Below the pieces are notes generated by a model that saw nothing but the letters and a program-made list of their open reading frames with translations, was not told the DNA's origin and did not search any database. The position numbers and the translations under genes are program-made. Shown piece after piece: positions 41,264 to 59,400 of a stretch of 64,000 bases of DNA (the first letter of the stretch is position 1; each line of letters begins with the position of its first letter). Location of the stretch: the NCBI GenBank assembly GCA_026936335.1, contig JAPMXV010000049.1, positions 496,001-560,000 on the forward strand, read 5' to 3'. This DNA is from Mantamonas sphyraenae STR306 (lineage: Eukaryota; Protista; CRuMs).

Positions 41264-44200
41264 TCATGCATCTGCAAAAACCTTGACTTCTTGCGGCTCC
41301 GCCTTGGCTTCGCCTTCGTGGCGACACCAATCGGGATTCTGGCGGATAAGCGCGGCCAGCGTTGTGTAGAAGCCACCCGGAGGTGTCACAAGCTGCACCA
41401 CCGACGCACCCGCACCTTTGAAGTGCTTCTCGCTGTGGAAGTACACGTCCTTCTCGTCAAACAGGCGATCGACCATGTGGATCTCCCCAAGCGAACGCTG
41501 CAGAAGCCAGTAGTCCACAAGCTCCATGTCGCGCTGGAACCACATCACGTCGTTGCTGTTGCTGACAATGCCACCTGCGAGCGCTCAATGTCAGCCAGCG
41601 TCTCGTTGAGTTCGAGCTGTTCCCGGACCTCGGCCGCATTCAGCCTGCGCTTCTGTGTCTTTGCGTACTTGAGACGCATGCGAAGACGCGACTTGACCTG
41701 TGCCGCGTGTTCCTCGCGCACGGGTGGAAACAGACGCAGTTTCACAAACCCTGTGCCCGTGTACTCTTGCAGCTGCTCCTGCGCCTCCTGTTCCTCCAGA
41801 TCCTCGTCCGTTAGCATGGCCCGTGCGGCGCTATTCAAGTATCCAATGTCCAGCAGCTTCTCCCGAAGGATCCGTGTGGCCTCTGCATACACCCTGCCGT
41901 ACTGCAGCGAATCGGCCACAAGTTGCACGTCCGCGTCGAGTGCCTCCATGTCCAGTTCACACTTGTGCAAGTCGTCCATGACGTTGGCAGGATCCACAGC
42001 AGACGTGCCCGACGACGATGACGCTCGCTCTGGCATGGCCACGATGCCTTGGGTGCTTCGCAGCGCGTCAAGCACACGGTGCTTCGGTTGCAGCGCAAAC
42101 GACACGTCCATGCCGTATGGTAGCAGCTCGTTGTTGAACGTGTATGCAGATGCAATCGCTCCCCAAATTGCACTCTGGAAGCGATGCGGGATCTGTTCGC
42201 CACACTCGCTCGCGCAATAGCGGAAAAAGTCTTCGGTGACCGCGTATTCCACAGGCGACAGGCCTCGCCTGCCAATGCCCAGCAGGAAGCGCTCCATATG
42301 TGTGTCGATGGTCACCGATGTGGAACGGTACGGATGCACGAGGTTGTCCAGGAAGCTTCGGATTTTGTAGCCCGACGGACAGCCCATGGGACCGCTCATG
42401 AAGTTGAGCAGGTCGCTGTTGGGATAGCTGCCCCACTTGGGCCGGCAGGACTGCGAGAATGCACGGAAGTTCAGCAGGGCATTCGCCACGTTGCGCCGAA
42501 TGGAACTGTTGCGGCTCGATGTGGCCAACAAGGCCATAAAGAAGCGCAGCTCGCTTTCCTTGTTCATGCACAGCTCCAACACAAGCTCGTGGAACGACTG
42601 GTACCAGTTGTGGAAGCCTCCCTCCTTGCCCGTCTCGTATGCGGTGCGCATGGTGTCCAGGTCCGGCAGCGTGTGCTCGTCCACCACTTTCGATCCCAGG
42701 AATGCACGCGTGTAGAGAGCGGCGTCGCGGTAGTTTGTAAAGCCCGTGCGGTACTCGGGCACGTAGGCAGAGCTGACGCGGATGCACGATGAGCCGCGCA
42801 ACACGTCCTGGTACAGCGCAACTGAGTCCACGGGCGCATGCGCACCATAGCCCTTGTGCGTGCGCAGAACACACGTCGTTCGTCCACATACTCCCTGCGT
42901 GCACTCATGCCAATGGCCAGCGGGTTGTACCGGATGTACCGTTGCAGGGCGTTCTGCGCCACAGTCGTCTTGCGGAAGCGTTGGTCAGGCACAAACAGGT
43001 ACGAGTACGCCTCCACTGCGTCCAGATAGGCCTTGCGTGCAAACAGCTCAGGTGACAGTGCACTTGTCGAATTGTCCGGACGGATCCACAGCACAGAGCC
43101 CTCCGTGTCCTGCTGCGAGTCCTCTGCCAGCACCAGTTCGTTCTGTTGGATCGTATCCAGCTCGCTCTGGGTGACCCATGCTCCGTAATAGTGGATCAGC
43201 AGTTCCTCGACGTCGTCTTTGTCCTGTTGGCTTCTATCTGGTGTGTTGAACGCCTCGATCCCTGCATTCTGTGCATGCTCGTTCTTGCTGTCGCTGCCCA
43301 GCTGTTCAAACAGCTCTTCGTAGCCGCTCACCCGCGGGTCCTCCAGCAACAATTCCACCTTGCGTGCTTTCTTGCGCTCTTCTTTGTGCAGAGCTGCCAC
43401 GAAGCGCAGCTGATGGTTGTGCTTCTCCAGCTCCCTGTTGATGGTCTCCTTGTCCTGAGGACGCACGACTCCACCGCCCCGTTTGTAGATCGCCATGAGC
43501 ATTGTGGTCATGCGCACCGCGTGTTGCTCTGCAATGTGGTTGATCTGAGCCTTTTGCTGCTCCACCAGGTTGGCCATCTTGTCCTTGAGCAGCGCCCTTC
43601 GCTCTGCTACCTCCTCCGCACTCAGCACACGCTGTCGCTTTCGAGCTGGCTCGCTCTCCAACGAGGACATCAAATCGGCCAGTTCCTGGTCCATCACAAC
43701 CTGTCCCGGCGTGCCGTCCACTTCTGTATCTCCGCCGTGATCTTTGGCCGCTGCGTCGTCTTCACCGATATCCTCATCGTCTGCGCTCGAACTGGTGCTG
43801 CTGCTTGTTCCTGTGTCACCGCCGATATTGTTGCTCTTGTCTGCGTGATCAAGGGCACCGTCCTCCAGCTCCTCCAGCAAGGCATTCTCCATCTGTTCGT
43901 TCTGCGTGTCGTCAATCTGTCCGTCAAAGTGCTTCCACAGTGTTTGGGCATCCACAGGACTATCTTCCTGGGCGTCACTCGAAGCTGAGCTTGCAGCCTG
44001 CCGTTCTTGCTCTGCCAGCACCTCCATGGCCTTTCGTCGCTTCTCCTCGACTCGTTGCCGGCGTTGCTCCTCGCGAAAAATCCGCAGCCGCCGTTCCAAC
44101 ATCGACTCGCCCCCTCCCGACGACGACTCGATGCTCAGTGCTGATGCCAGAGCCAACGAGGCCGAAGCATGGGAGTTTTCTCCTTGTTTGCCCCTGGCGT

Positions 44201-44744
44201 TGGTGTCGACAGAAAGCTGTGCTGCGTGTTTCACCGCTGTGTTCAGGAACGCGTTGACGACGACTGCCCTCTCGGGACTTGCCGGTGCTGCGCTGACAGG
44301 TTCCGTCTGCATGTGGTCTGTGGCCTCCTCTGTTCGGTTTACCCTGCGTTCGGTAGGGAGCACGGGCTGGTGGAACACAGGCGGAGTGACACTGCGCTGC
44401 ACGTGTGTGGGCGGCGTCTCCTCGTCCGTCATCTCGTCCAGCTTGCGCTTTCGAACAAAAAGGTCCACCATCTGCTTGCCGTCGTCCTCGTTCTCTGCCT
44501 TTTCGGCATTGGCCATCAACACCTTGTTCATGCGCTCTTGTGCCAGCCGTTGCTGCCGACGCAGTGCTGCCAAGCGGTCGCTGGCAGACGATGCAGTGAC
44601 GGACTTTCGCTGACGAAACACGGTAGGAAGCCTGCCCGCCGCCTCAACTGACTTTACCCTGCCTGCTGCAGCCGCAGATGAGCTTCCATCCAAAGAGGCC
44701 ACCTGCTTGGGTTTCCGTCTGATTTTGAGAGCACTGAGATCCAT
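41264..44744 (-). CDS. ~1160-aa intronless protein: disordered/coiled N-terminal half plus a phage-type HhH DNA-glycosylase-fold domain; two apparent 1-nt deletions (~42869, ~41581)
   Basis: Three ORF-track pieces join seamlessly if one base is added at each junction (..ERRVF|LRTHKGYGAHAPVDSV.. and ..DIE|ALAGGIVSNSNDVMWFQ..). Domain motifs are HNWY, ALLATSS..RNVANA, SGYKIRSFLDNL, VTIDTHMER, EY..E..A..G..P..QSAIW. Confidence 0.72.
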
Positions 44745-44808
44745 GTTGTAGCGGGGCCACGGCTTGCACCGGCTCGGGCATTGCTTCTGCCAGCCCACTT
44801 GTCATCAC
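44745..44808. promoter_or_regulatory. Putative bidirectional promoter shared by the HhH-fold gene and FANCJ (64 bp)
   Basis: Position between the ATG at 44744 (-) and the ATG at 44809 (+). Confidence 0.45.
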
Positions 44809-47800
44809 ATGTCCAGTGTATGGAGTGGCTTCACCAGAGGGTGGGGCGACATGGAGGCATCGGTGAAGGGTGGGTTCGCAGCCGACGACGATGACGGCGA
44901 GCTGGAAGAGGCCACGCGGCCCAGCAAGATCAAGCCCAAGGAGGGGCATCCCTTTGTGGTCAGCGGTGTCACAGTGCAGTTCCCCTTTGAAACTCCGTAC
45001 AGTCCGCAACGTGCCCTTATGTTCAAAGTGATCCGAGCCCTGAATACGCACACCAATGCCCTGCTCGAGTCTCCGACGGGTGAGTGAATGTGGCGCGAGA
45101 AGCGCGCGCCAAGGGCTCTTTCCCGCCCCGCTACGCACACACAGGAAGCTTGAACCTCCCATCTCGCTGGCAATGTAATATATGCATGCATGCGAGTGCG
45201 CGAGTGTGTTTTGCGTGACGTCACCACCATTACCAACTGACTCATGCCAATGGATTCTCAGGAACCGGAAAGTCGGCCGCCTTGCTGTGCTCAGCGCTGG
45301 CTTGGCAGGCCCAGCAAAAGGAGCTGGCCAAGAACAACAACACAGAAGAGCAGCTGGAGGAAAAGGAACACCTGCTGGAGCAGTTGATGCTCGAATACTT
45401 TGAGGTGGTGACCAAAGGTGATCCGACGGACAAAGAGACCCTGCGCAAGGCCACCCAGCAATTGCACGCCATGGCCGCACCATCCGGTACCAAGCAGAAC
45501 AAGAACAAGGGCAAGGCAAAAGCAACTGTGGTGTCCTCGAGCAGCAGCAGCAGCAGCAGCAGCAGCAGTGGCGTGGAGACCGACGACTTTGACAGCGACG
45601 GGGTAGGCGCGGCACGAGCAGATGAGAGCATCCAATGGCGTCAATTGGTGGTGAACATGTCCATTCGGTACCAGCGAGGGGAGTTGGTCAAGCTGTCGTC
45701 TCTGGGAGACATCGGTGCAGATGAAGACGACATCGAAAACGACTCTATCAGCTCCCAGGAGGAGATGGCCATCGAGGTGGCTCCCCGTGCCAAGCCTGAG
45801 CCGGTTCAAATTGAGTACGAGACCGAGGAAGTGCCCGAGTCGCCTCAGGACCTGTTTGAGGACGCAGAGACGGACGGGGAAGATGAAGGCGACGACGACG
45901 ACGACGACGACGACTTTCAGCAGACGCCGCCAAACAAGACCAAGGAGAAGCGGCGCGCACAAGCAGCTTCCACAAAGAGGAGTGTTGCAGAACGTGCGCA
46001 CAGGCAGAAGCTGCTGCATCGAGACGTGATGAAACTGACGAGCCTGATCCGTGAAGAGATGCGCGCGGCGCAGCAGCTGCGTAGGCAGCAACAGCGTGGT
46101 GTGCCTGTGATCTACTACACATCACGCACGCACTCTCAGATCGAGCAGGTGATCAAAGAGCTTGCCACCACGCCATACAGGCCCACGATGAGTCTGCTCG
46201 GCAGCCGAAAACACTATTGCATCAACCCAAACGCACAGCGCGGTGCACGCGGTGCCAAGCTCGACGTCAACACAGAGTGCAGGAAACTGCTGGAGCACCA
46301 GTCGTGCAGGTACTTTGGCAAGTCCAAAAGCATTGCAAACAGCACGGGCTTTTCCCGGGACATGCCTCTCTTTGACATCGAGGAGCTGTCCGAGTATGGC
46401 TCACGCCACTCTGCGTGTCCCTATTACATCTCTCGTGAGCGAGCCAATGTGGCTGAGATTGTGTTCTGCCCATACAACTACGTTCTCGACCCGGGCATTC
46501 GCAGCTCCCTTGAGTTGGACATGAAGAACGCCGTGGTCATTCTGGACGAAGCGCATAACATCGAGGACGTGTGTCGCAGCTCTGCATCGGCTGAGCTGGA
46601 CATGGCGCTCGTCAGCTCGGTGCTCGTGCAGCTGCGTAGCGCGCGAAAGAACGCGGAGGAGGGCGAGGGGGCCGTGGGCGGAGACGACCTCGTCGACGTG
46701 TACAGCAAGGTGATCACCGTCATGGCTGCCATGGAACAGTGGTCCAACGGCCTGATGGAGCAGATGGACAATGGTAAGGGCACAGTGGAAGGCTCGGGCA
46801 ACTTTCGAACAGTGCGCTTCGAGTACAGCGGGAACCTGTTGCGTGACCTGGCTCGCTCCTGGACGGTGGACAATCACACCATTTCCATGCACAGCTCGGC
46901 TGCCAAGGATCTCCTGGACGCAAACAACGAGCTGGAGATGGAGTCGCCCCTGAAGCTTGACGCAGGTGCAACCAGCGTTGTCCAGAGCCTATTTATGGTG
47001 CTCAAGTACATGGTGGACGACAACTACAAGCATCTGCCGGACTACCGTCTCGTGTACGTGCAGTCGTCCAAGTACGACCGCAAGATCCAGGACAAGAGGC
47101 ACATGTATCACGCCAAGTTCTGGTGCATGAACCCGGCCGTCGTGTTTGCACCGTTGGCTGAACAGACGGGCAGTATTGTGCTTGCTTCGGGCACGTTGAG
47201 TCCAATGGAGTCGTTCCAGAGCGAGCTTGGCGTGCGCTTCGAGCAGCGACTGGAGGCCAACCACGTGATCAATCCAGACACGCAGGTGCTGGTACGCTCC
47301 GTGGCTACGGCCAACCGCATCCCACTCTTGGGCGTGTACAAACAGCAGAAGAATCTGCACTTTCAGGACGTGGTGGGCATGTCGCTCCTGTTCATCCTGC
47401 AAAACACACCGCACGGAGTGCTTTTCTTCCTGCCGTCCTACTCGTTGCTCAACACCCTCTACGAGAGATGGGAGCAGACGGGTGTGCTTGCAAAGATGCA
47501 GGCCGTCAAGCAGGTGTTTGTGGAGCCTCGTGCTGCAGATGCAGAGACGTTTGAAGAGGTCATCGCCGACTACTCGGCTGCGATCCGAGCCTCTGTGGCA
47601 GCGGAGCGCGCCAAGAGCATGCACGGCGACCTGGCCGAGTTGACATCCAGGAGCCGAGTGCGTCACAAGCCGCGCACAAGCGGCGCCCTGTTCATGGCAG
47701 TCATGCGCGGCAAAGCGTCAGAGGGCATTGACTTTTCCGACGAGCATGCGCGCGCCGTGGTCATCCTCAGCATCCCGTTCCCGAACTATATGGACCCACA

Positions 47801-48434
47801 GCTGCGTCTGAAGAAGGAGTACAACCGGATGCGGCACCGAGCAGACAGCAACATGCTTGACGGAGACGCGTGGTACAAACTGCAAGCTTTTCGGGCTCTG
47901 AATCAGGCCATCGGACGTTGTCTGCGCCACAGCCAAGACTATGGCGCCATCATTCTGCTCGATCAACGCTACGGCGAAGAGCACAATCAAGCTGGCATCT
48001 CGAAATGGGTGCGGCCGTGCATCCGACACAATCACACCGTCAACGAGACGCTGCAGGATCTGCACCAGTTCTTCTCCCGCCACAAGGAGCGCGAGCGGAA
48101 AGAGCGGTTGGCCATGGTGCAAGCGGCGACTTCTGCTTCAACAAAGGAGGAGCCCGAGACCGAGAGCCTCGTGGAGCTTGTGTACACCAAGCCCGAACCC
48201 GAGGTATCGACCAAGGTGGAGGAAGACAGGAGTGGCGAAGAGGATGACATGCAAAGGAGTGGTGAAGGGGACGACATGCGACAGTACTTTGCGCAAGGAC
48301 AGCAGAAACGCAAGCTGGAGCAGCTGGAGTCAGCCCGGCGCTTCCAAGAGGCCACACAGCGCGGTGGCGAGGGTAGTCCGCATCAGACGGGACGGACGGA
48401 TGGAAATGACGTGAAGCGATCGCGATTGTGTTGA
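44809..48434 (+). CDS. BRIP1: FANCJ/BRIP1-like Fe-S DEAH helicase (XPD family); intron 45080-45261
   Basis: VQFPFETPYSPQ (Q motif), ALLESPTG|TGKS..LLCSALAW, SRTHSQ, Fe-S cysteines, DEAHNIED, LASGTLSPM, LEANHVI, RGKASEGIDFSD and QAFRALNQAIGRCLRH. The motifs favour FANCJ over RTEL1, but a phylogeny is needed. Confidence 0.88.
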
Positions 48435-56450: not shown

Positions 56451-59400
56451 TCAACGAATCGAAATGATGTCGTTCAACGACCCTGCGCCTGTGTTTCCAC
56501 CAAAGATCACTACTTTGTGCTCCAGGTCGTCTGTCGTGCTGATACCCTTGCCCTTGCCCTTGCCTTTGCCGTCTTCGCCCTCGCTTTCCAGCCCCTCCAC
56601 TCGGAACAGATCTTCGTTGACCATGATCGGCGCAAGACACGCTCCGTACCGTCCCGCAGGCTCCGTTCCAAACATCTGCACCTTGGTCGACCACGTCTTG
56701 CCCGGCACATCAAGAATGTGTACGTCGTGGAACGCGCTGACGCAATCCTTGGTGCCACCGTACACGAGCATCTGCTTGCCCAGAGCACACGCCACCGCTC
56801 CCTCCCGTTCAGACGGCCCATACCCGCCACCCCAGCTTGGGTTGGCTCCACACCGGTTTGTTCTCGTCTGGACTAAGATAGTACACGTCGTTGCACACTC
56901 CCTTTTTCGTTCGGCCGCCAAAAATGACCACCGTTCCGTCCACAACCACCATTGTGTGCCCCCGTCGTGCCGACGGCTTGGAGCCCTTTGGTTTGATCTT
57001 TCCCCACGCAAACTGGTTACATCGCAGCACGTGCAGGTCGTCCAACAGGCCGCTGTTGTTCTCGCCACCAAAGATGTACAAGTCGTTGCCCACCGTCACC
57101 GACGCATGGTGTGCACGCTCTGCCGGCATGTCCCCAGACGTACGCGGGCGCAGCCACATGCCCTCCAGCAGATTGAGCACAAACACGTCGTCGGCATACG
57201 TTGCGTCCTTGCTGTCCGACGCAAACCTCGTTTGTCCACCGTACACAATCAGCGTCCGCCCGCCTCCCAATGCATTGGCTGTATGAAAGGCACGAGGGGC
57301 AGGATAATCCCCTGTCGCTTCCAATTGGCTCGACCGCCATCCGTCGGTCTCCACAACAAATGCATCCTCGTAAAACACTGCCATCTCGTCAAACATGGGA
57401 TCCACCCCTCCAAACAGTAGGATCTCGCTGCCAAACGCGACCATGGATGCTCCCGTGCGCGCCTGTGGCACCAGGCCTTTTGTGGCGTGTGTATTCCAGA
57501 TGGCCGCCAGTGGCTTTTCCTTGGCCAAGCGAATGTTTGTGTTGGCCTTCTTCTTGCCACGTCCAAACAGCCGCGGTGACGATGTCGATGACGACGATGA
57601 CGATGACGACGATTCAGAAATCATGCTGTCCCTGTCAAACAGCCCTCGGAAGTTTTCTGGCTTTTCCATCACCGTCGATCTGCGCCCCATAGGCTGCTCC
57701 GACGACTCCCCATCCGAGAAACGCCTGGCTGTCAAGTTCTTCAACAGTTTCGCTTCCTGACTTGCCATGGTCGTCTCCTCGGAGGCACCGTCGTCATTGC
57801 CGTCACTTTGTGTTCCCTCCCCGCCCTCGCTCTTCGCGGCCACCTTGCTCGGCAGCTCACCCACCCGTTGGGACGTTGGGATCTCCTCTACAGGTGCAGC
57901 TGGCATTGTTGGCAAGTCGTCGCCACGGCCAAACAGTCGTGTCAGCCTGTTGCGTCGCGACTTGGCACGTGGAAACGCTGCCAGGACGTTCTCCTCGTTT
58001 GGCTTCTCCACTGCCTTGGCCAGCACCTCTTTCGTCTTTTCGTCCACCTGCATTTTGGTGTGAGCAACAGATGGACGCCTTCCGCGTGGCGCCGAACGCC
58101 CAAGTGTCGGGTGCTCCAGTTCTTTGCTGTCCGATAACGACGACGACGACGACGACGTTGACTTGACTGACTTGGGGCTGCCCATCCCAGGCATCATCAT
58201 CGACAGCTTCAATCCTCTCGAACGCTCTGCAATCGAAGGAGACTGTGTCTGCTGCTCCTTCGCCTTTGCCTCGGCTTCCGCCTCCGCTTCCGCTGCGGCG
58301 GCCTCCAGGACACCTTGAACGCGTTCGTCCACACTCATGGTTGTCTTCTTTGTTGGTGGCCTGCGCTTTGGCCTGCCTGCGCGACCTTTTGTTGGATGCG
58401 ACAGTTTCTTGGGTTCCACTGCCTTCTTAATGGGAGGTCCTCCACCTCCCATGCCTGGCATCATCATGGGCCCGCCCATTGGGATGGCAAGCCCTGCCGC
58501 ACGGTCTGCAATGGACTTGGAACGTGTGTGGCCTCCGTCGCTGCCTGGCGACCCCATGGGGATGGCAAGACCTGCAGCACGTTCTGCGATCGATTTCGTG
58601 CGATTGTGGCCGCCGTCACTACCTGGCGAGCCCATCGGGATGGTCAAGCCACCCATGCGTGCAGCCACACCCACGTTGGGACTCGAGCTACTGCTGCTGG
58701 AGCCTGTGTCTTCCACAGACACGGTCACAGAGGTTGCGATTTCCTCAACAGCCTTCTGTGCCTCGGCTTCCGCCGCGGATGCGTCCAGAATGCCCTTGAC
58801 GCGTTCGTCCACACTCATGGTTGTCTTCTTTGTTGGTGGCCTGCGCTTTGGCCTGCCTGCGCGACCCTTTGTCGGATGCGACAGCTTCTTGGGTTCCGTG
58901 GCCTTCTTCTTGATGGGAGGTCCTCCACCTCCCATGCCTGGCATCATCATGGGCCCACCCATTGGGATAGCAAGGCCTGCCGCACGGTCTGCAATGGACT
59001 TGGAACGTGTGTGTCCTCCGTCACTGCCAGGCGAACCCATGGGGATGGCAAGACCTGCAGCACGTTCTGCGATCGATTTCGTGCGATTGTGGCCTCCATC
59101 GCTGTCCATGTTGCTGTTGGGCGAGCTGTCGGACTCGGTTGCTGCTGGCGTTGTCGAAATCTTGGGTGGCGACTGTGCGCTGAGGGCGCCAAAGTTGCGC
59201 AGCTCGCCGAGATCCACGCGCTGGGATCGAGGACGCGCACGTCCACTCTTTACACGTTCGATGGCGCTGATGGCTTTCTTTGGCGCAAGTTTGGTCTTGA
59301 GGTCCGTATGAAGCTTGTTGAGGTGTTCTCCAAACAGCTCGGTCACGATTGCGTCAAAGGTGTCTGCCGGGGCGTCTTCGTCGTTCACCTTGAGCGTGGC

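What the first reader, a model, noticed from the sequence alone, without database searches (positions are those of the whole stretch)
41264..44744. Phage-type HhH DNA-glycosylase-fold domain embedded in a large intronless nuclear-type protein
Seen: three separate ORFs join into one ~1160-aa frame after two single-base repairs. The segment ~42150-42700 has the ordered motifs WY, LLATSS..N..A, GYKIRSFLDNL, VTIDTHMER and Y..E..A..G..P..QSAIW. Known: G-x-K hairpin followed by VDTH..R is the core of HhH-GPD glycosylases (EndoIII/MutY/OGG1). As I recall, this particular motif set matches an uncharacterised tailed-phage/prophage family (DUF7178-like) rather than any standard eukaryotic glycosylase, and other phage HhH-fold proteins (aGPT-PPlases) act in base hypermodification. 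Inference: a virus-derived DNA repair or base-modifying domain domesticated by fusion to a eukaryote-style acidic/coiled N-terminus. That N-terminus carries NLS-like motifs (RKRK, RKRQR) and a degenerate PIP-degron-like MVDLFVRKRK. The putative catalytic Lys and Asp appear retained.
Basis: partly seen in the sequence, partly recalled or inferred. Interest (0 to 1): 0.82.

Follow-up and report, generated by a model that had tools for sequence, protein, structure and literature searches.

The report
Phage-type DNA glycosylase domain, eukaryotic gene
A roughly 1160-residue nuclear gene of the protist Mantamonas sphyraenae carries a DNA-repair-type (HhH-GPD glycosylase) core of a kind otherwise typical of bacteriophages, and it belongs to an unstudied protein family shared with ichthyosporeans and cyanidiophyte red algae.

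Summary
Three minus-strand open frames (41264-44744) are one gene of about 1160 codons, broken by two one-base deficits at 42856-42866 and 41573-41577. Continuous proteins from Mantamonas plastica and nine other eukaryotes bridge both breaks.

- **Organism:** the genome matches the published M. sphyraenae PacBio assembly.
- **Frame breaks:** they are more likely consensus errors than decay, but no reads could be obtained.
- **Core domain:** residues about 690-870 pass Pfam DUF7178 (33.9 bits, cut-off 27), a family dominated by tailed phages. An AlphaFold model (pLDDT 88) matches only HhH-GPD enzymes. The best match is Ogg2-type 8-oxoguanine glycosylase 3n0u (Z 11.3), and the top 23 rows all have this fold.
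- **Conserved residues:** a Lys (42364-42366) and an Asp (42304-42306) are invariant in 39 eukaryotic and phage sequences. The Asp aligns with the Asp-x-His motif of 3n0u.
this is not a Mantamonas oddity. It is a conserved, unnamed eukaryotic family of 816-1118 aa (Ichthyophonus, Chromosphaera, Galdieria, Cyanidium, Cyanidioschyzon CMB136C and metagenomic eukaryotes) with its own conserved flanking modules.
- **Phylogeny:** the eukaryotic sequences form one clade next to multidomain mobile-element forms.
- **Not supported:** the PIP-degron idea.
- **Function:** a glycosylase/lyase role is inferred, not shown.

The same locus was also noted from an overlapping window of this genome.

The parts
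41264..44744 (-). Whole gene, about 1160 codons, read as three frame pieces (A, B, C) with X at the two breaks. No intron is needed.
   Evidence: Continuous homologs P0003-P0011, P0069, P0002 and P0021 cover it collinearly.
43230..44744 (-). Poorly conserved N-terminal region of about 500 aa, rich in A, E, S and R. It carries basic clusters RKRK (44442-44453) and RKRQR (43629-43643) and one conserved coiled block, DKETINRELEKHNHQLRFVAALHKEERK (from 43454).
   Evidence: The coiled block aligns with Ichthyophonus, Chromosphaera, Galdieria and others. The ortholog model shows a long helical hairpin there.
42667..43202 (-). Conserved N-flank module (LLIHYYGAWV ... RKTTVAQNALQRYIRYNPLAIGMSARREYV ... 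YVPEYRTGF). It spans the first frame break.
   Evidence: 56% identity to M. plastica P0021 over 132 aa, E 3e-47. The equivalent part of the ortholog model is confident and packs on the core. Whole-model searches gave no PDB match, and the module was not folded on its own.
42856..42866 (-). Frame break 1. Eleven bases (TGCGCACGCAC on the coding strand) lie where homologs have four codons, so one base is missing.
42133..42666 (-). HhH-GPD-fold core, equal to the DUF7178 domain (Pfam match 42151-42612). Landmarks are WY at 42601-42606, the SRNSS/SPN motif with Ser at 42514-42516, the hairpin PSGYK with the invariant Lys at 42364-42366, VTIDTH with the invariant Asp at 42304-42306, and P..Q...W at 42163-42189.
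41267..42132 (-). Conserved C-flank module (LLDIGYL, LFPPVRE, R.R...A..Q.R.L, MWFQRD, DEKDVYFHSEKHF). It spans the second frame break.
   Evidence: The ortholog model shows an alpha/beta unit with pLDDT about 90. Whole-model searches gave no PDB match, and the module was not folded on its own.
41573..41577 (-). Frame break 2. Five bases (CAGGT) lie where M. plastica has two codons, so one base is missing.
44745..44808 (.). A 64-bp divergent spacer to the FANCJ-like helicase gene on the + strand. The helicase's first exon is 44809-45087, and the gene continues in the ORF that ends at 48434.
   Evidence: The coordinates of the two first ATGs were read from the ORF translations.

Best explanation
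The locus is one intron-free nuclear gene of Mantamonas sphyraenae encoding a protein of about 1160 aa. That protein belongs to an unnamed, conserved eukaryotic family.

Its central 180-residue core is a DUF7178 domain. This is an HhH-GPD-fold module nearest to Ogg2-type 8-oxoguanine glycosylase/lyases, with a helix-hairpin-helix carrying an invariant Lys and an invariant Asp 20 residues further on. The most likely mechanism is that of a bifunctional DNA glycosylase/AP lyase. The enzyme flips out a damaged or modified base. The Lys attacks C1' to form a Schiff base, the Asp assists, and the strand is nicked by beta-elimination. This mechanism is inferred and the substrate is unknown.

The conserved N- and C-flank modules pack on the core in the ortholog model. 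They probably supply targeting or partner binding.

The core was most likely taken once from a bacterial or phage mobile element, closest to the multidomain 'polyvalent' forms. It then spread or was inherited among eukaryotes.

The two one-base frame breaks are most likely PacBio consensus errors rather than decay (about 70:30).
For: **One gene.** Continuous homologs bridge both breaks.

**Organism and assembly.** The assembly has 25.06 Mb, 78 contigs and GC 59.19%, and was built from PacBio reads with FALCON, Racon and Pilon.

**A eukaryotic family.**
- Hits at E 1e-37 to 1e-60 include Ichthyophonus, Chromosphaera, Galdieria, Cyanidium and C. merolae CMB136C.
- Further members lie on metagenomic contigs that also carry histone, ENTH/ANTH and THOC5 genes.

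**Domain and fold.**
- The window's piece and eight full-length homologs that were scanned pass the DUF7178 cut-off.
- The AF2 model has pLDDT 88 and pTM 0.86.
- Foldseek's only hits with TM of 0.4 or more are Ogg2 enzymes.
- In VIA-align the top row is 3n0u (Z 11.3, 171 residues, rmsd 3.5), and the top 23 rows are all HhH-GPD-fold enzymes.
- The ortholog model gives the same result (Z 9.6).

**Catalytic pair.**
- K156 and D176 are invariant in 39 sequences.
- The family's VD.H aligns with LDKH of 3n0u.
- Phage relatives are annotated as N-glycosylase/DNA lyase by some depositors.

**Origin.**
- The eukaryotic clade has 100/100 support and groups at 97/91 with the multidomain forms.
- Some of those multidomain forms carry ddrB-ParB, PcfJ or DUF3293 domains.

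**No decay.**
- The window agrees at 84 of 93 family-conserved columns. Eight of the nine differences are shared with M. plastica.
- Another gene in the window has a Kelch propeller split between frames with no room for an intron.
- A first-stage note counts about eight one-base-missing breaks in this window.
Against: - No reads or transcripts of this species could be examined. Two breaks in one 3.5-kb gene, while ArgRS and FANCJ next door are intact, could be real lesions.
- The sequence-level link to solved glycosylases is not significant (3n0u at E 0.8), and PF00730 does not match. Homology to HhH-GPD therefore rests on a predicted structure and on motifs.
- The fold also houses non-DNA enzymes and transferases, such as QNG1/DUF2419 (Z 7.4) and the phage 5-PmdU glycinyltransferase (Z 4.6).
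- No member of DUF7178 has been assayed, and no paper mentions DUF7178 or CMB136C.
- The direction of transfer depends on an unrooted tree.
Confidence: 0.6

Rival explanations
1. The gene is a recently inactivated pseudogene, or a null allele, in M. sphyraenae. The two one-base deletions are real and the family is being lost in this species.
For: There are two breaks within 1.3 kb of one gene, while the flanking ArgRS and FANCJ-like genes are intact. The family is patchy among eukaryotes, so losses are common. The genome is diploid, and the primary contig shows one haplotype.
Against: There are no in-frame stops in 745, 479 and 106 open codons. No species-specific loss of conserved residues is seen. 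The assembly comes from PacBio CLR reads, and other frame breaks occur in intact genes of the same window. Both breaks are of the missing-base type.
Confidence: 0.28
2. The core is not a DNA glycosylase. It would use the HhH-GPD fold for something else: hydrolysis of a nucleoside or nucleotide (as QNG1 does with queuosine), transfer onto a modified base (as the phage aGPT-PPlase-type enzymes do), or non-catalytic binding of DNA.
For: QNG1/DUF2419 scores Z 7.4, like EndoIII, and a phage 5-PmdU glycinyltransferase is also found (Z 4.6). The phage members have no tested function, and their gene neighbourhoods are uninformative. Family-specific invariant residues (WY, S106, N114, Q219, W223) point to a pocket of its own.
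Against: The best match by a wide margin is a DNA glycosylase/lyase (Z 11.3 against 7.6 for the next row). The Lys-in-hairpin plus Asp pair typical of bifunctional DNA glycosylases is invariant. The multidomain relatives carry DNA-handling domains such as ParB-like and PcfJ.
Confidence: 0.2
3. The stretch is bacterial or phage contamination, or a very recent insertion, and not a eukaryotic gene.
For: The domain family is overwhelmingly viral.
Against: The stretch lies inside contig C49, at about 538 kb of the contig. That contig belongs to an assembly in which most contigs carry telomere repeats at both ends. The locus lies between ArgRS and an intron-containing FANCJ-like gene, and its GC (0.58-0.59) is the same as its surroundings. 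tblastn against 50,697 phage genomes finds nothing. The closest relatives are long eukaryotic proteins.
Confidence: 0.01

Closest known systems
Pfam DUF7178 (PF23802) and PHROG 3842: proteins of about 195 aa from tailed phages (actinophages, cyanophages, roseophage SIO1 gp9), and domains of multidomain mobile-element proteins
   Same: It passes the Pfam cut-off. It shares the same invariant set (WY, S, N, G.K..F..N, T.D, P...Q...W) and the same predicted fold.
   Different: It shares only 19-29% identity with these proteins. The eukaryotic clade sits on a long stem. The domain is embedded in a protein of 816-1160 aa with conserved eukaryote-specific flanks. tblastn of the window's own domain against the phage genomes finds nothing.
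Ogg2-type 8-oxoguanine DNA glycosylase/AP lyases (Thermotoga Tm1821 3n0u, M. jannaschii 3knt, S. solfataricus 3fhg)
   Same: These are the best structural matches (Z 11.3, TM 0.50-0.60). The domain size is similar. The Asp motif and the C-terminal P....W helix align. A Lys lies in the hairpin upstream of the Asp.
   Different: There is no significant sequence similarity (E 0.8). The Lys-to-Asp spacing is 20 residues here, against 18 in Ogg2 as I recall it. The pocket residues (WY, SPN, Q) are specific to this family. Recognition of 8-oxoG was not tested.
Canonical eukaryotic HhH-GPD glycosylases (NTH1, OGG1, MUTYH; Pfam PF00730)
   Same: They share the superfamily fold (Z 6-7.6) and, presumably, base-excision chemistry.
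   Different: PF00730 does not match this protein. M. sphyraenae has at least two separate PF00730 genes elsewhere, on C21 and C55, so this gene is an additional lineage and not a replacement. It has no Fe-S cluster motif.
Domains that eukaryotes took from phage or plasmid polyvalent proteins (ArdC-N in XPC/Rad4 and Tc38; PMC5512222)
   Same: The evolutionary pattern is the same. A DNA-handling domain of mobile-element multidomain proteins has been reused in a eukaryotic nuclear protein. The nearest prokaryotic relatives include proteins with ddrB-ParB, PcfJ or DUF3293 domains.
   Different: The domain is different. That paper lists no glycosylase or HhH-GPD domain. The eukaryotic distribution here is patchy rather than universal.

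Membership tests
Pfam DUF7178 (PF23802) | HMM score at or above the gathering cut-off of 27 bits | tested here: met
   Piece B scores 33.9 bits with E 4e-8, and the six-frame genome search gives 35.8 bits. Homologs P0002-P0011 and P0069 score 27.1-37.6 bits.
Pfam DUF7178 (PF23802) | The family's conserved residues are present | tested here: met
   W76, Y77, S106, K156, F160, D176, Q219 and W223 are invariant across 11 eukaryotic and 28 phage or bacterial sequences.
HhH-GPD superfamily | Two-lobed all-helical fold with a helix-hairpin-helix | tested here: met
   The AF2 model has pLDDT 88. In VIA-align, 3n0u scores Z 11.3 over 171 residues at rmsd 3.5, and the top 23 rows are all enzymes of this fold. 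Foldseek gives probability 1.00 for 3n0u. All of this rests on a predicted structure.
HhH-GPD superfamily | A hairpin followed by a loop and an invariant catalytic Asp, plus a Lys in the hairpin helix for bifunctional members | tested here: met
   PSGYK at 42364-42378 and VTIDTH with the Asp at 42304-42306 are both invariant. The Asp aligns with LDKH of 3n0u. Structural equivalence of the Lys is inferred from the helix pattern H141-146 / H155-165.
HhH-GPD superfamily | Match to the Pfam HhH-GPD model PF00730 | tested here: not met
   No PF00730 hit appears at E up to 1 or 10. The same model finds other genes in this genome.
HhH-GPD superfamily | N-glycosidic bond cleavage, or AP-lyase activity | not testable with these tools
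   This needs enzyme assays.
Ogg2 subfamily | Significant sequence similarity and the 8-oxoG recognition residues | tested here: not met
   The profile search against PDB sequences gives 3n0u at E 0.79, 9o00 at E 0.8 and 3fhf at E 2.2. The recognition residues were not examined. I do not file the protein as Ogg2.
Phage aGPT-PPlase-type base-modifying transferases | Closest structural or sequence kinship | tested here: not met
   8z2m (PaMx11 gp46) scores only Z 4.6 at rank 23, far below the glycosylases.
PIP box / PIP degron | Q-x-x-[LIVM]-x-x-[FY]-[FY], plus a basic residue at +4 for the degron. I am recalling this pattern from memory. | tested here: not met
   KQMVDLFVRKRK has D at the hydrophobic position and V-R at the aromatic pair. 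The segment is not alignable among homologs.

The most novel reading that the evidence does not exclude
This is an additional, ancient lineage of eukaryotic base-excision enzymes, captured once from a phage or plasmid multidomain protein. It would now work with eukaryote-specific flanking modules on a substrate that the canonical enzymes (NTH1, OGG1, MUTYH) do not handle. That substrate might be a modified or epigenetic base. The lineage survives only in a few deep branches: Mantamonas, ichthyosporeans, cyanidiophytes and some uncultured picoeukaryotes.
Probability: 0.2. Interest if true: 0.8.

Novelty: new variant of a known kind. Interest (0 to 1): 0.55.

Why it matters
Eukaryotic base-excision repair is thought to rely on a small, well-catalogued set of glycosylase families. 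This locus shows a further HhH-GPD-fold lineage of phage or mobile-element type. It is fixed as a large, conserved nuclear protein in three distant eukaryotic groups, and nobody has studied it.

The finding gives the phage family DUF7178 a fold and a testable catalytic pair. It adds a second example of eukaryotes reusing DNA-handling domains from mobile-element multidomain proteins. It also points to a tractable organism for testing function, because Cyanidioschyzon merolae (gene CMB136C) can be genetically manipulated.

The finding also warns that this Mantamonas assembly contains one-base frame breaks that hide long genes.

Tried and rejected
- **Reads.** Expression and the true sequence at the breaks remain open.
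- **Word-index search with piece A**. It found nothing, because its words come from the fast-evolving first 500 residues. The exhaustive search then found the family.
- **Other blank searches.** These were tblastn of the window's domain against 50,697 phage genomes, phmmer against PDB sequences, NCBIfam, and full-text searches for DUF7178 and CMB136C.
- **P0002 as a short 506-aa protein.** It starts at an M that is conserved in the window, which suggested a short protein and a separate upstream gene. I rejected this. Isoform i2 (P0021) and all other homologs continue upstream through that M.
- **Introns at the two joins.** I rejected this because the alignment is collinear and leaves no spare bases.
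- **Programmed frameshifting.** I rejected this because there is no slippery heptamer at either site.
- **Counting abutting open frames by sign across the window**. This was uninformative, because off-frames stay open in 59% GC DNA.
- **Fold searches with the 704-residue ortholog model**. They gave no match for the flanking modules. This is not evidence of new folds, because the modules were not folded alone.
- **Phage gene neighbourhoods**. They gave no functional hint.
- **Joined protein.** It was used only inside scripts, with X at the breaks.
Full report
**What is in the sequence**

On the minus strand, three stop-free stretches lie in three different frames.
- A runs 44801-42567, with its first ATG at 44744.
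- B runs 42984-41548.
- C runs 41584-41267, with the stop at 41264-41266.

The window lies at C49:496001-560000 of an assembly of 25,061,354 bases in 78 contigs, with GC about 0.58-0.59 around the locus. These figures match the published FALCON assembly of Mantamonas sphyraenae (25.06 Mb, 78 primary contigs, GC 59.19%). That assembly was built from PacBio reads and polished with Racon and Pilon (PMC10492846). The only close protein relatives are Trinity isoforms of Mantamonas plastica from EukProt.

**One gene or three**

The pieces belong to one gene.
- M. plastica isoform i7 (P0002, 506 aa) starts inside frame A (MSTRREYV against the window's MSARREYV). It continues through all of B at 65% identity and into C at 66% identity.
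- Isoform i2 (P0021) begins 120 residues further upstream. It is 56% identical to the tail of A (E 3e-47) and runs straight on into B.
- At the first join, the relative has four residues between a conserved F and K, where the window has 11 bases (42856-42866, TGCGCACGCAC).
- At the second join, the relative has two residues between a conserved S and G, where the window has 5 bases (41573-41577).

Each break is therefore a single missing base. There is no room for an intron and no slippery site. Nine further full-length eukaryotic proteins are continuous across both places. With X at the breaks, the model has 1160 residues.

**Are the breaks real**

Indirect evidence favours assembly error.
- All three pieces are free of stops.
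- The window agrees at 84 of 93 columns that are conserved in at least 8 of 9 other eukaryotic homologs. Eight of the nine differences are shared with M. plastica, so they belong to the lineage and are not decay.
- The assembly rests on PacBio CLR reads.
- In the same window, the Kelch propeller of a myosin gene is split between two frames with no gap.
- A first-stage note reports about eight one-base-missing breaks in this window. I verified only the Kelch case, and its sign differs.

Against this, two breaks fall in this one gene while its neighbours are intact. I put assembly error at about 70% and a real recent lesion or null allele at about 30%.

**The core domain**

Piece B passes Pfam DUF7178 (PF23802) with E 4e-8 and 33.9 bits against a cut-off of 27, over residues 74-227. 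It also hits PHROG 3842 weakly. All 30 nearest ESM Atlas clusters are DUF7178 proteins of about 195-215 aa labelled mostly Uroviricota.

A phage member (P0038) has relatives in 149 phage genomes, including actinophages, cyanophages and roseophage SIO1 gp9. Some depositors call them "N-glycosylase/DNA lyase" or "DNA glycosylase". Their neighbourhoods are small hypothetical genes and say nothing more.

**Fold**

An AlphaFold2 model of window:42112-42831:-, built with a 39-sequence alignment, has pLDDT 88.1 and pTM 0.86 and is all-helical.
- Foldseek against the PDB gives weak E-values. However, the only matches with TM of 0.4 or more are Ogg2-type 8-oxoguanine glycosylases: 3n0u (E 0.05, probability 1.00, TM 0.50/0.56), 3knt and 3fhg.
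- The Foldseek-independent search of 48,161 chains puts 3n0u first (Z 11.3, 171 residues, rmsd 3.5).
- Rows 2-23 of that search are all HhH-GPD-fold proteins: EndoIII, NTHL1, QNG1/DUF2419, OGG1, AGOG, MagIII, MutY, Mag1, AlkA, ROS1 and, last at Z 4.6, a phage 5-PmdU glycinyltransferase. Below them come only short partial matches.
- The tool warns that helical models often reach Z 7-8 by chance. Here the top match stands 3.7 units above the next row, and the list is uniform.
- A model of an ortholog gives the same answer (Z 9.6).

At sequence level the link is not significant (3n0u at E 0.79). The alignment nevertheless puts the family's VD.H on LDKH of 3n0u and matches the following helices. 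PF00730 itself does not match.

**Catalytic residues**

Across 11 eukaryotic and 28 phage or bacterial sequences, the invariant positions are W76, Y77, S106, K156, F160, D176, Q219 and W223. A103, N114, G154, N163, T174 and P215 are nearly invariant.

K156 (42364-42366) opens the second helix of a helix-hairpin-helix (H141-146, H155-165). D176 (42304-42306) caps the next helix. From established knowledge of EndoIII, OGG1 and Ogg2, that is the arrangement of the Schiff-base Lys and the catalytic Asp in bifunctional glycosylase/lyases. The mechanism I propose follows from this and is an inference. No DUF7178 protein has been assayed, as far as the searchable literature shows.

**A eukaryotic family**

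The exhaustive search found 66 proteins at E of 0.001 or better. Eleven were at E of 1e-30 or better. Ten of these share 41-49% identity with the query; nine are long (816-1118 aa) and carry the domain in the middle.

The named members are:
- Ichthyophonus hoferi
- Chromosphaera perkinsii
- Galdieria partita GJQ10904.1
- Cyanidium caldarium KAK4537271.1
- Cyanidioschyzon merolae CMB136C / XP_005535221.1

All are annotated "hypothetical". The unnamed members lie on contigs that also carry histone H2A, cyclophilin, ENTH/ANTH, THOC5 or Ccdc124 genes, so they are eukaryotic. DUF7178 is their only Pfam hit.

The alignment shows conserved blocks outside the core:
- a coiled block (HNHQLRFVAALHKEERK)
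- an N-flank module (LLIHYYGAWV ... RYIRYNPLAIGMSARREYV)
- a C-flank module (LLDIGYL, LFPPVRE, MWFQRD, DEKDVYFHSEKHF)

A model of P0003:144-847 (pLDDT 80.9, pTM 0.77) is confident from residue about 210 to the end. pTM is 0.77 and the flank segments reach the same pLDDT as the core, which I read as one folded unit; I did not inspect coordinates or PAE. The flanks found no PDB match in whole-model searches. This is not evidence of novelty. The first 500 residues of the Mantamonas protein are poorly conserved and rich in A, E, S and R.

**Origin**

In a maximum-likelihood tree of the core (230 columns), the 11 eukaryotic rows form one clade (100/100) on a long stem. Inside it, Mantamonas splits from the rest and the cyanidiophytes group together. 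The eukaryotic clade joins the multidomain bacterial or phage forms (97/91), and most of the short solo phage proteins (14 of 17) form a separate clade. Some of the multidomain forms carry ddrB-ParB, PcfJ or DUF3293 domains, which are typical of the "polyvalent proteins" of phages and conjugative elements. That paper does not list this domain (PMC5512222).

A single capture from a mobile element is the simplest reading. The tree is only midpoint-rooted, however, and three named lineages cannot separate ancient vertical descent with losses from transfer between eukaryotes. M. sphyraenae also keeps at least two ordinary PF00730 genes, so this gene is an extra.

- The protein is not a one-off fusion.
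- The aGPT-PPlase comparison is the weakest of the structural matches.
- MVDLFVRKRK does not fit a PIP box and lies in an unalignable region.
- The basic clusters exist, but localisation is untested.
- The head-to-head FANCJ-like neighbour, 64 bp away, is not conserved in the other loci seen. It adds little.

**Verdict**

The locus is a new variant of a known kind: an HhH-GPD-fold core of phage type in a conserved, unstudied eukaryotic protein. Interest is moderate (0.55). The homology and fold results are solid. The function, the substrate and the integrity of the gene in this species are open.

The joined model was used only in scripts, with X at the breaks.

Noticed in passing
window 56812-56836 (minus strand): The Kelch propeller at the end of the myosin gene continues from one frame (open to 56812) into another (56454-57095) with no gap between the Pfam matches. 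This is another frame break inside an otherwise intact gene. Its sign is the opposite of the two breaks studied here.
   Followed up: partly
window 44809-45087 and 45282-48434 (+ strand): The FANCJ/RTEL-like helicase gene starts 64 bp from the studied gene, head to head. Its first exon ends near ...LLESPTGE at 45087, and the gene resumes in the long ORF, so it has at least one intron.
   Followed up: no
window 44232-44255 (NAFLNTAV); P0003, P0006, P0008, P0010, P0069 N-termini: Several homologs share a short N-terminal motif, NPF(L/W)(K/Q)(R/A/V)(A/S), for example QNPFLKRA and ENPFLKAAKALGLE. The Mantamonas protein has a similar NAFLNTAV. This may be a short docking motif of unknown partner.
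   Followed up: no
P0001, P0002, P0021 (M. plastica TRINITY_DN5678_c0_g1 isoforms i6, i7, i2): The EukProt proteome of M. plastica holds this gene only as fragments of 392, 506 and 208 aa, each beginning at an internal Met. No full-length model of the Mantamonas protein was found in the searched collections.
   Followed up: partly
P0041, P0054, P0064, P0053 (bacterial or phage proteins of 767-2284 aa): In these multidomain mobile-element proteins, DUF7178 occurs alongside DUF3293/S-AdoMet-lyase-like, ddrB-ParB and PcfJ domains and a weak, sub-threshold GemA match. The polyvalent-protein survey (PMC5512222) does not mention a glycosylase-fold module.
   Followed up: partly
G000:C21:195516-195908 and G000:C55:374593-375112: Two canonical HhH-GPD (PF00730) genes occur elsewhere in the genome. 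The C55 gene is split into two matches, probably exons.
   Followed up: no
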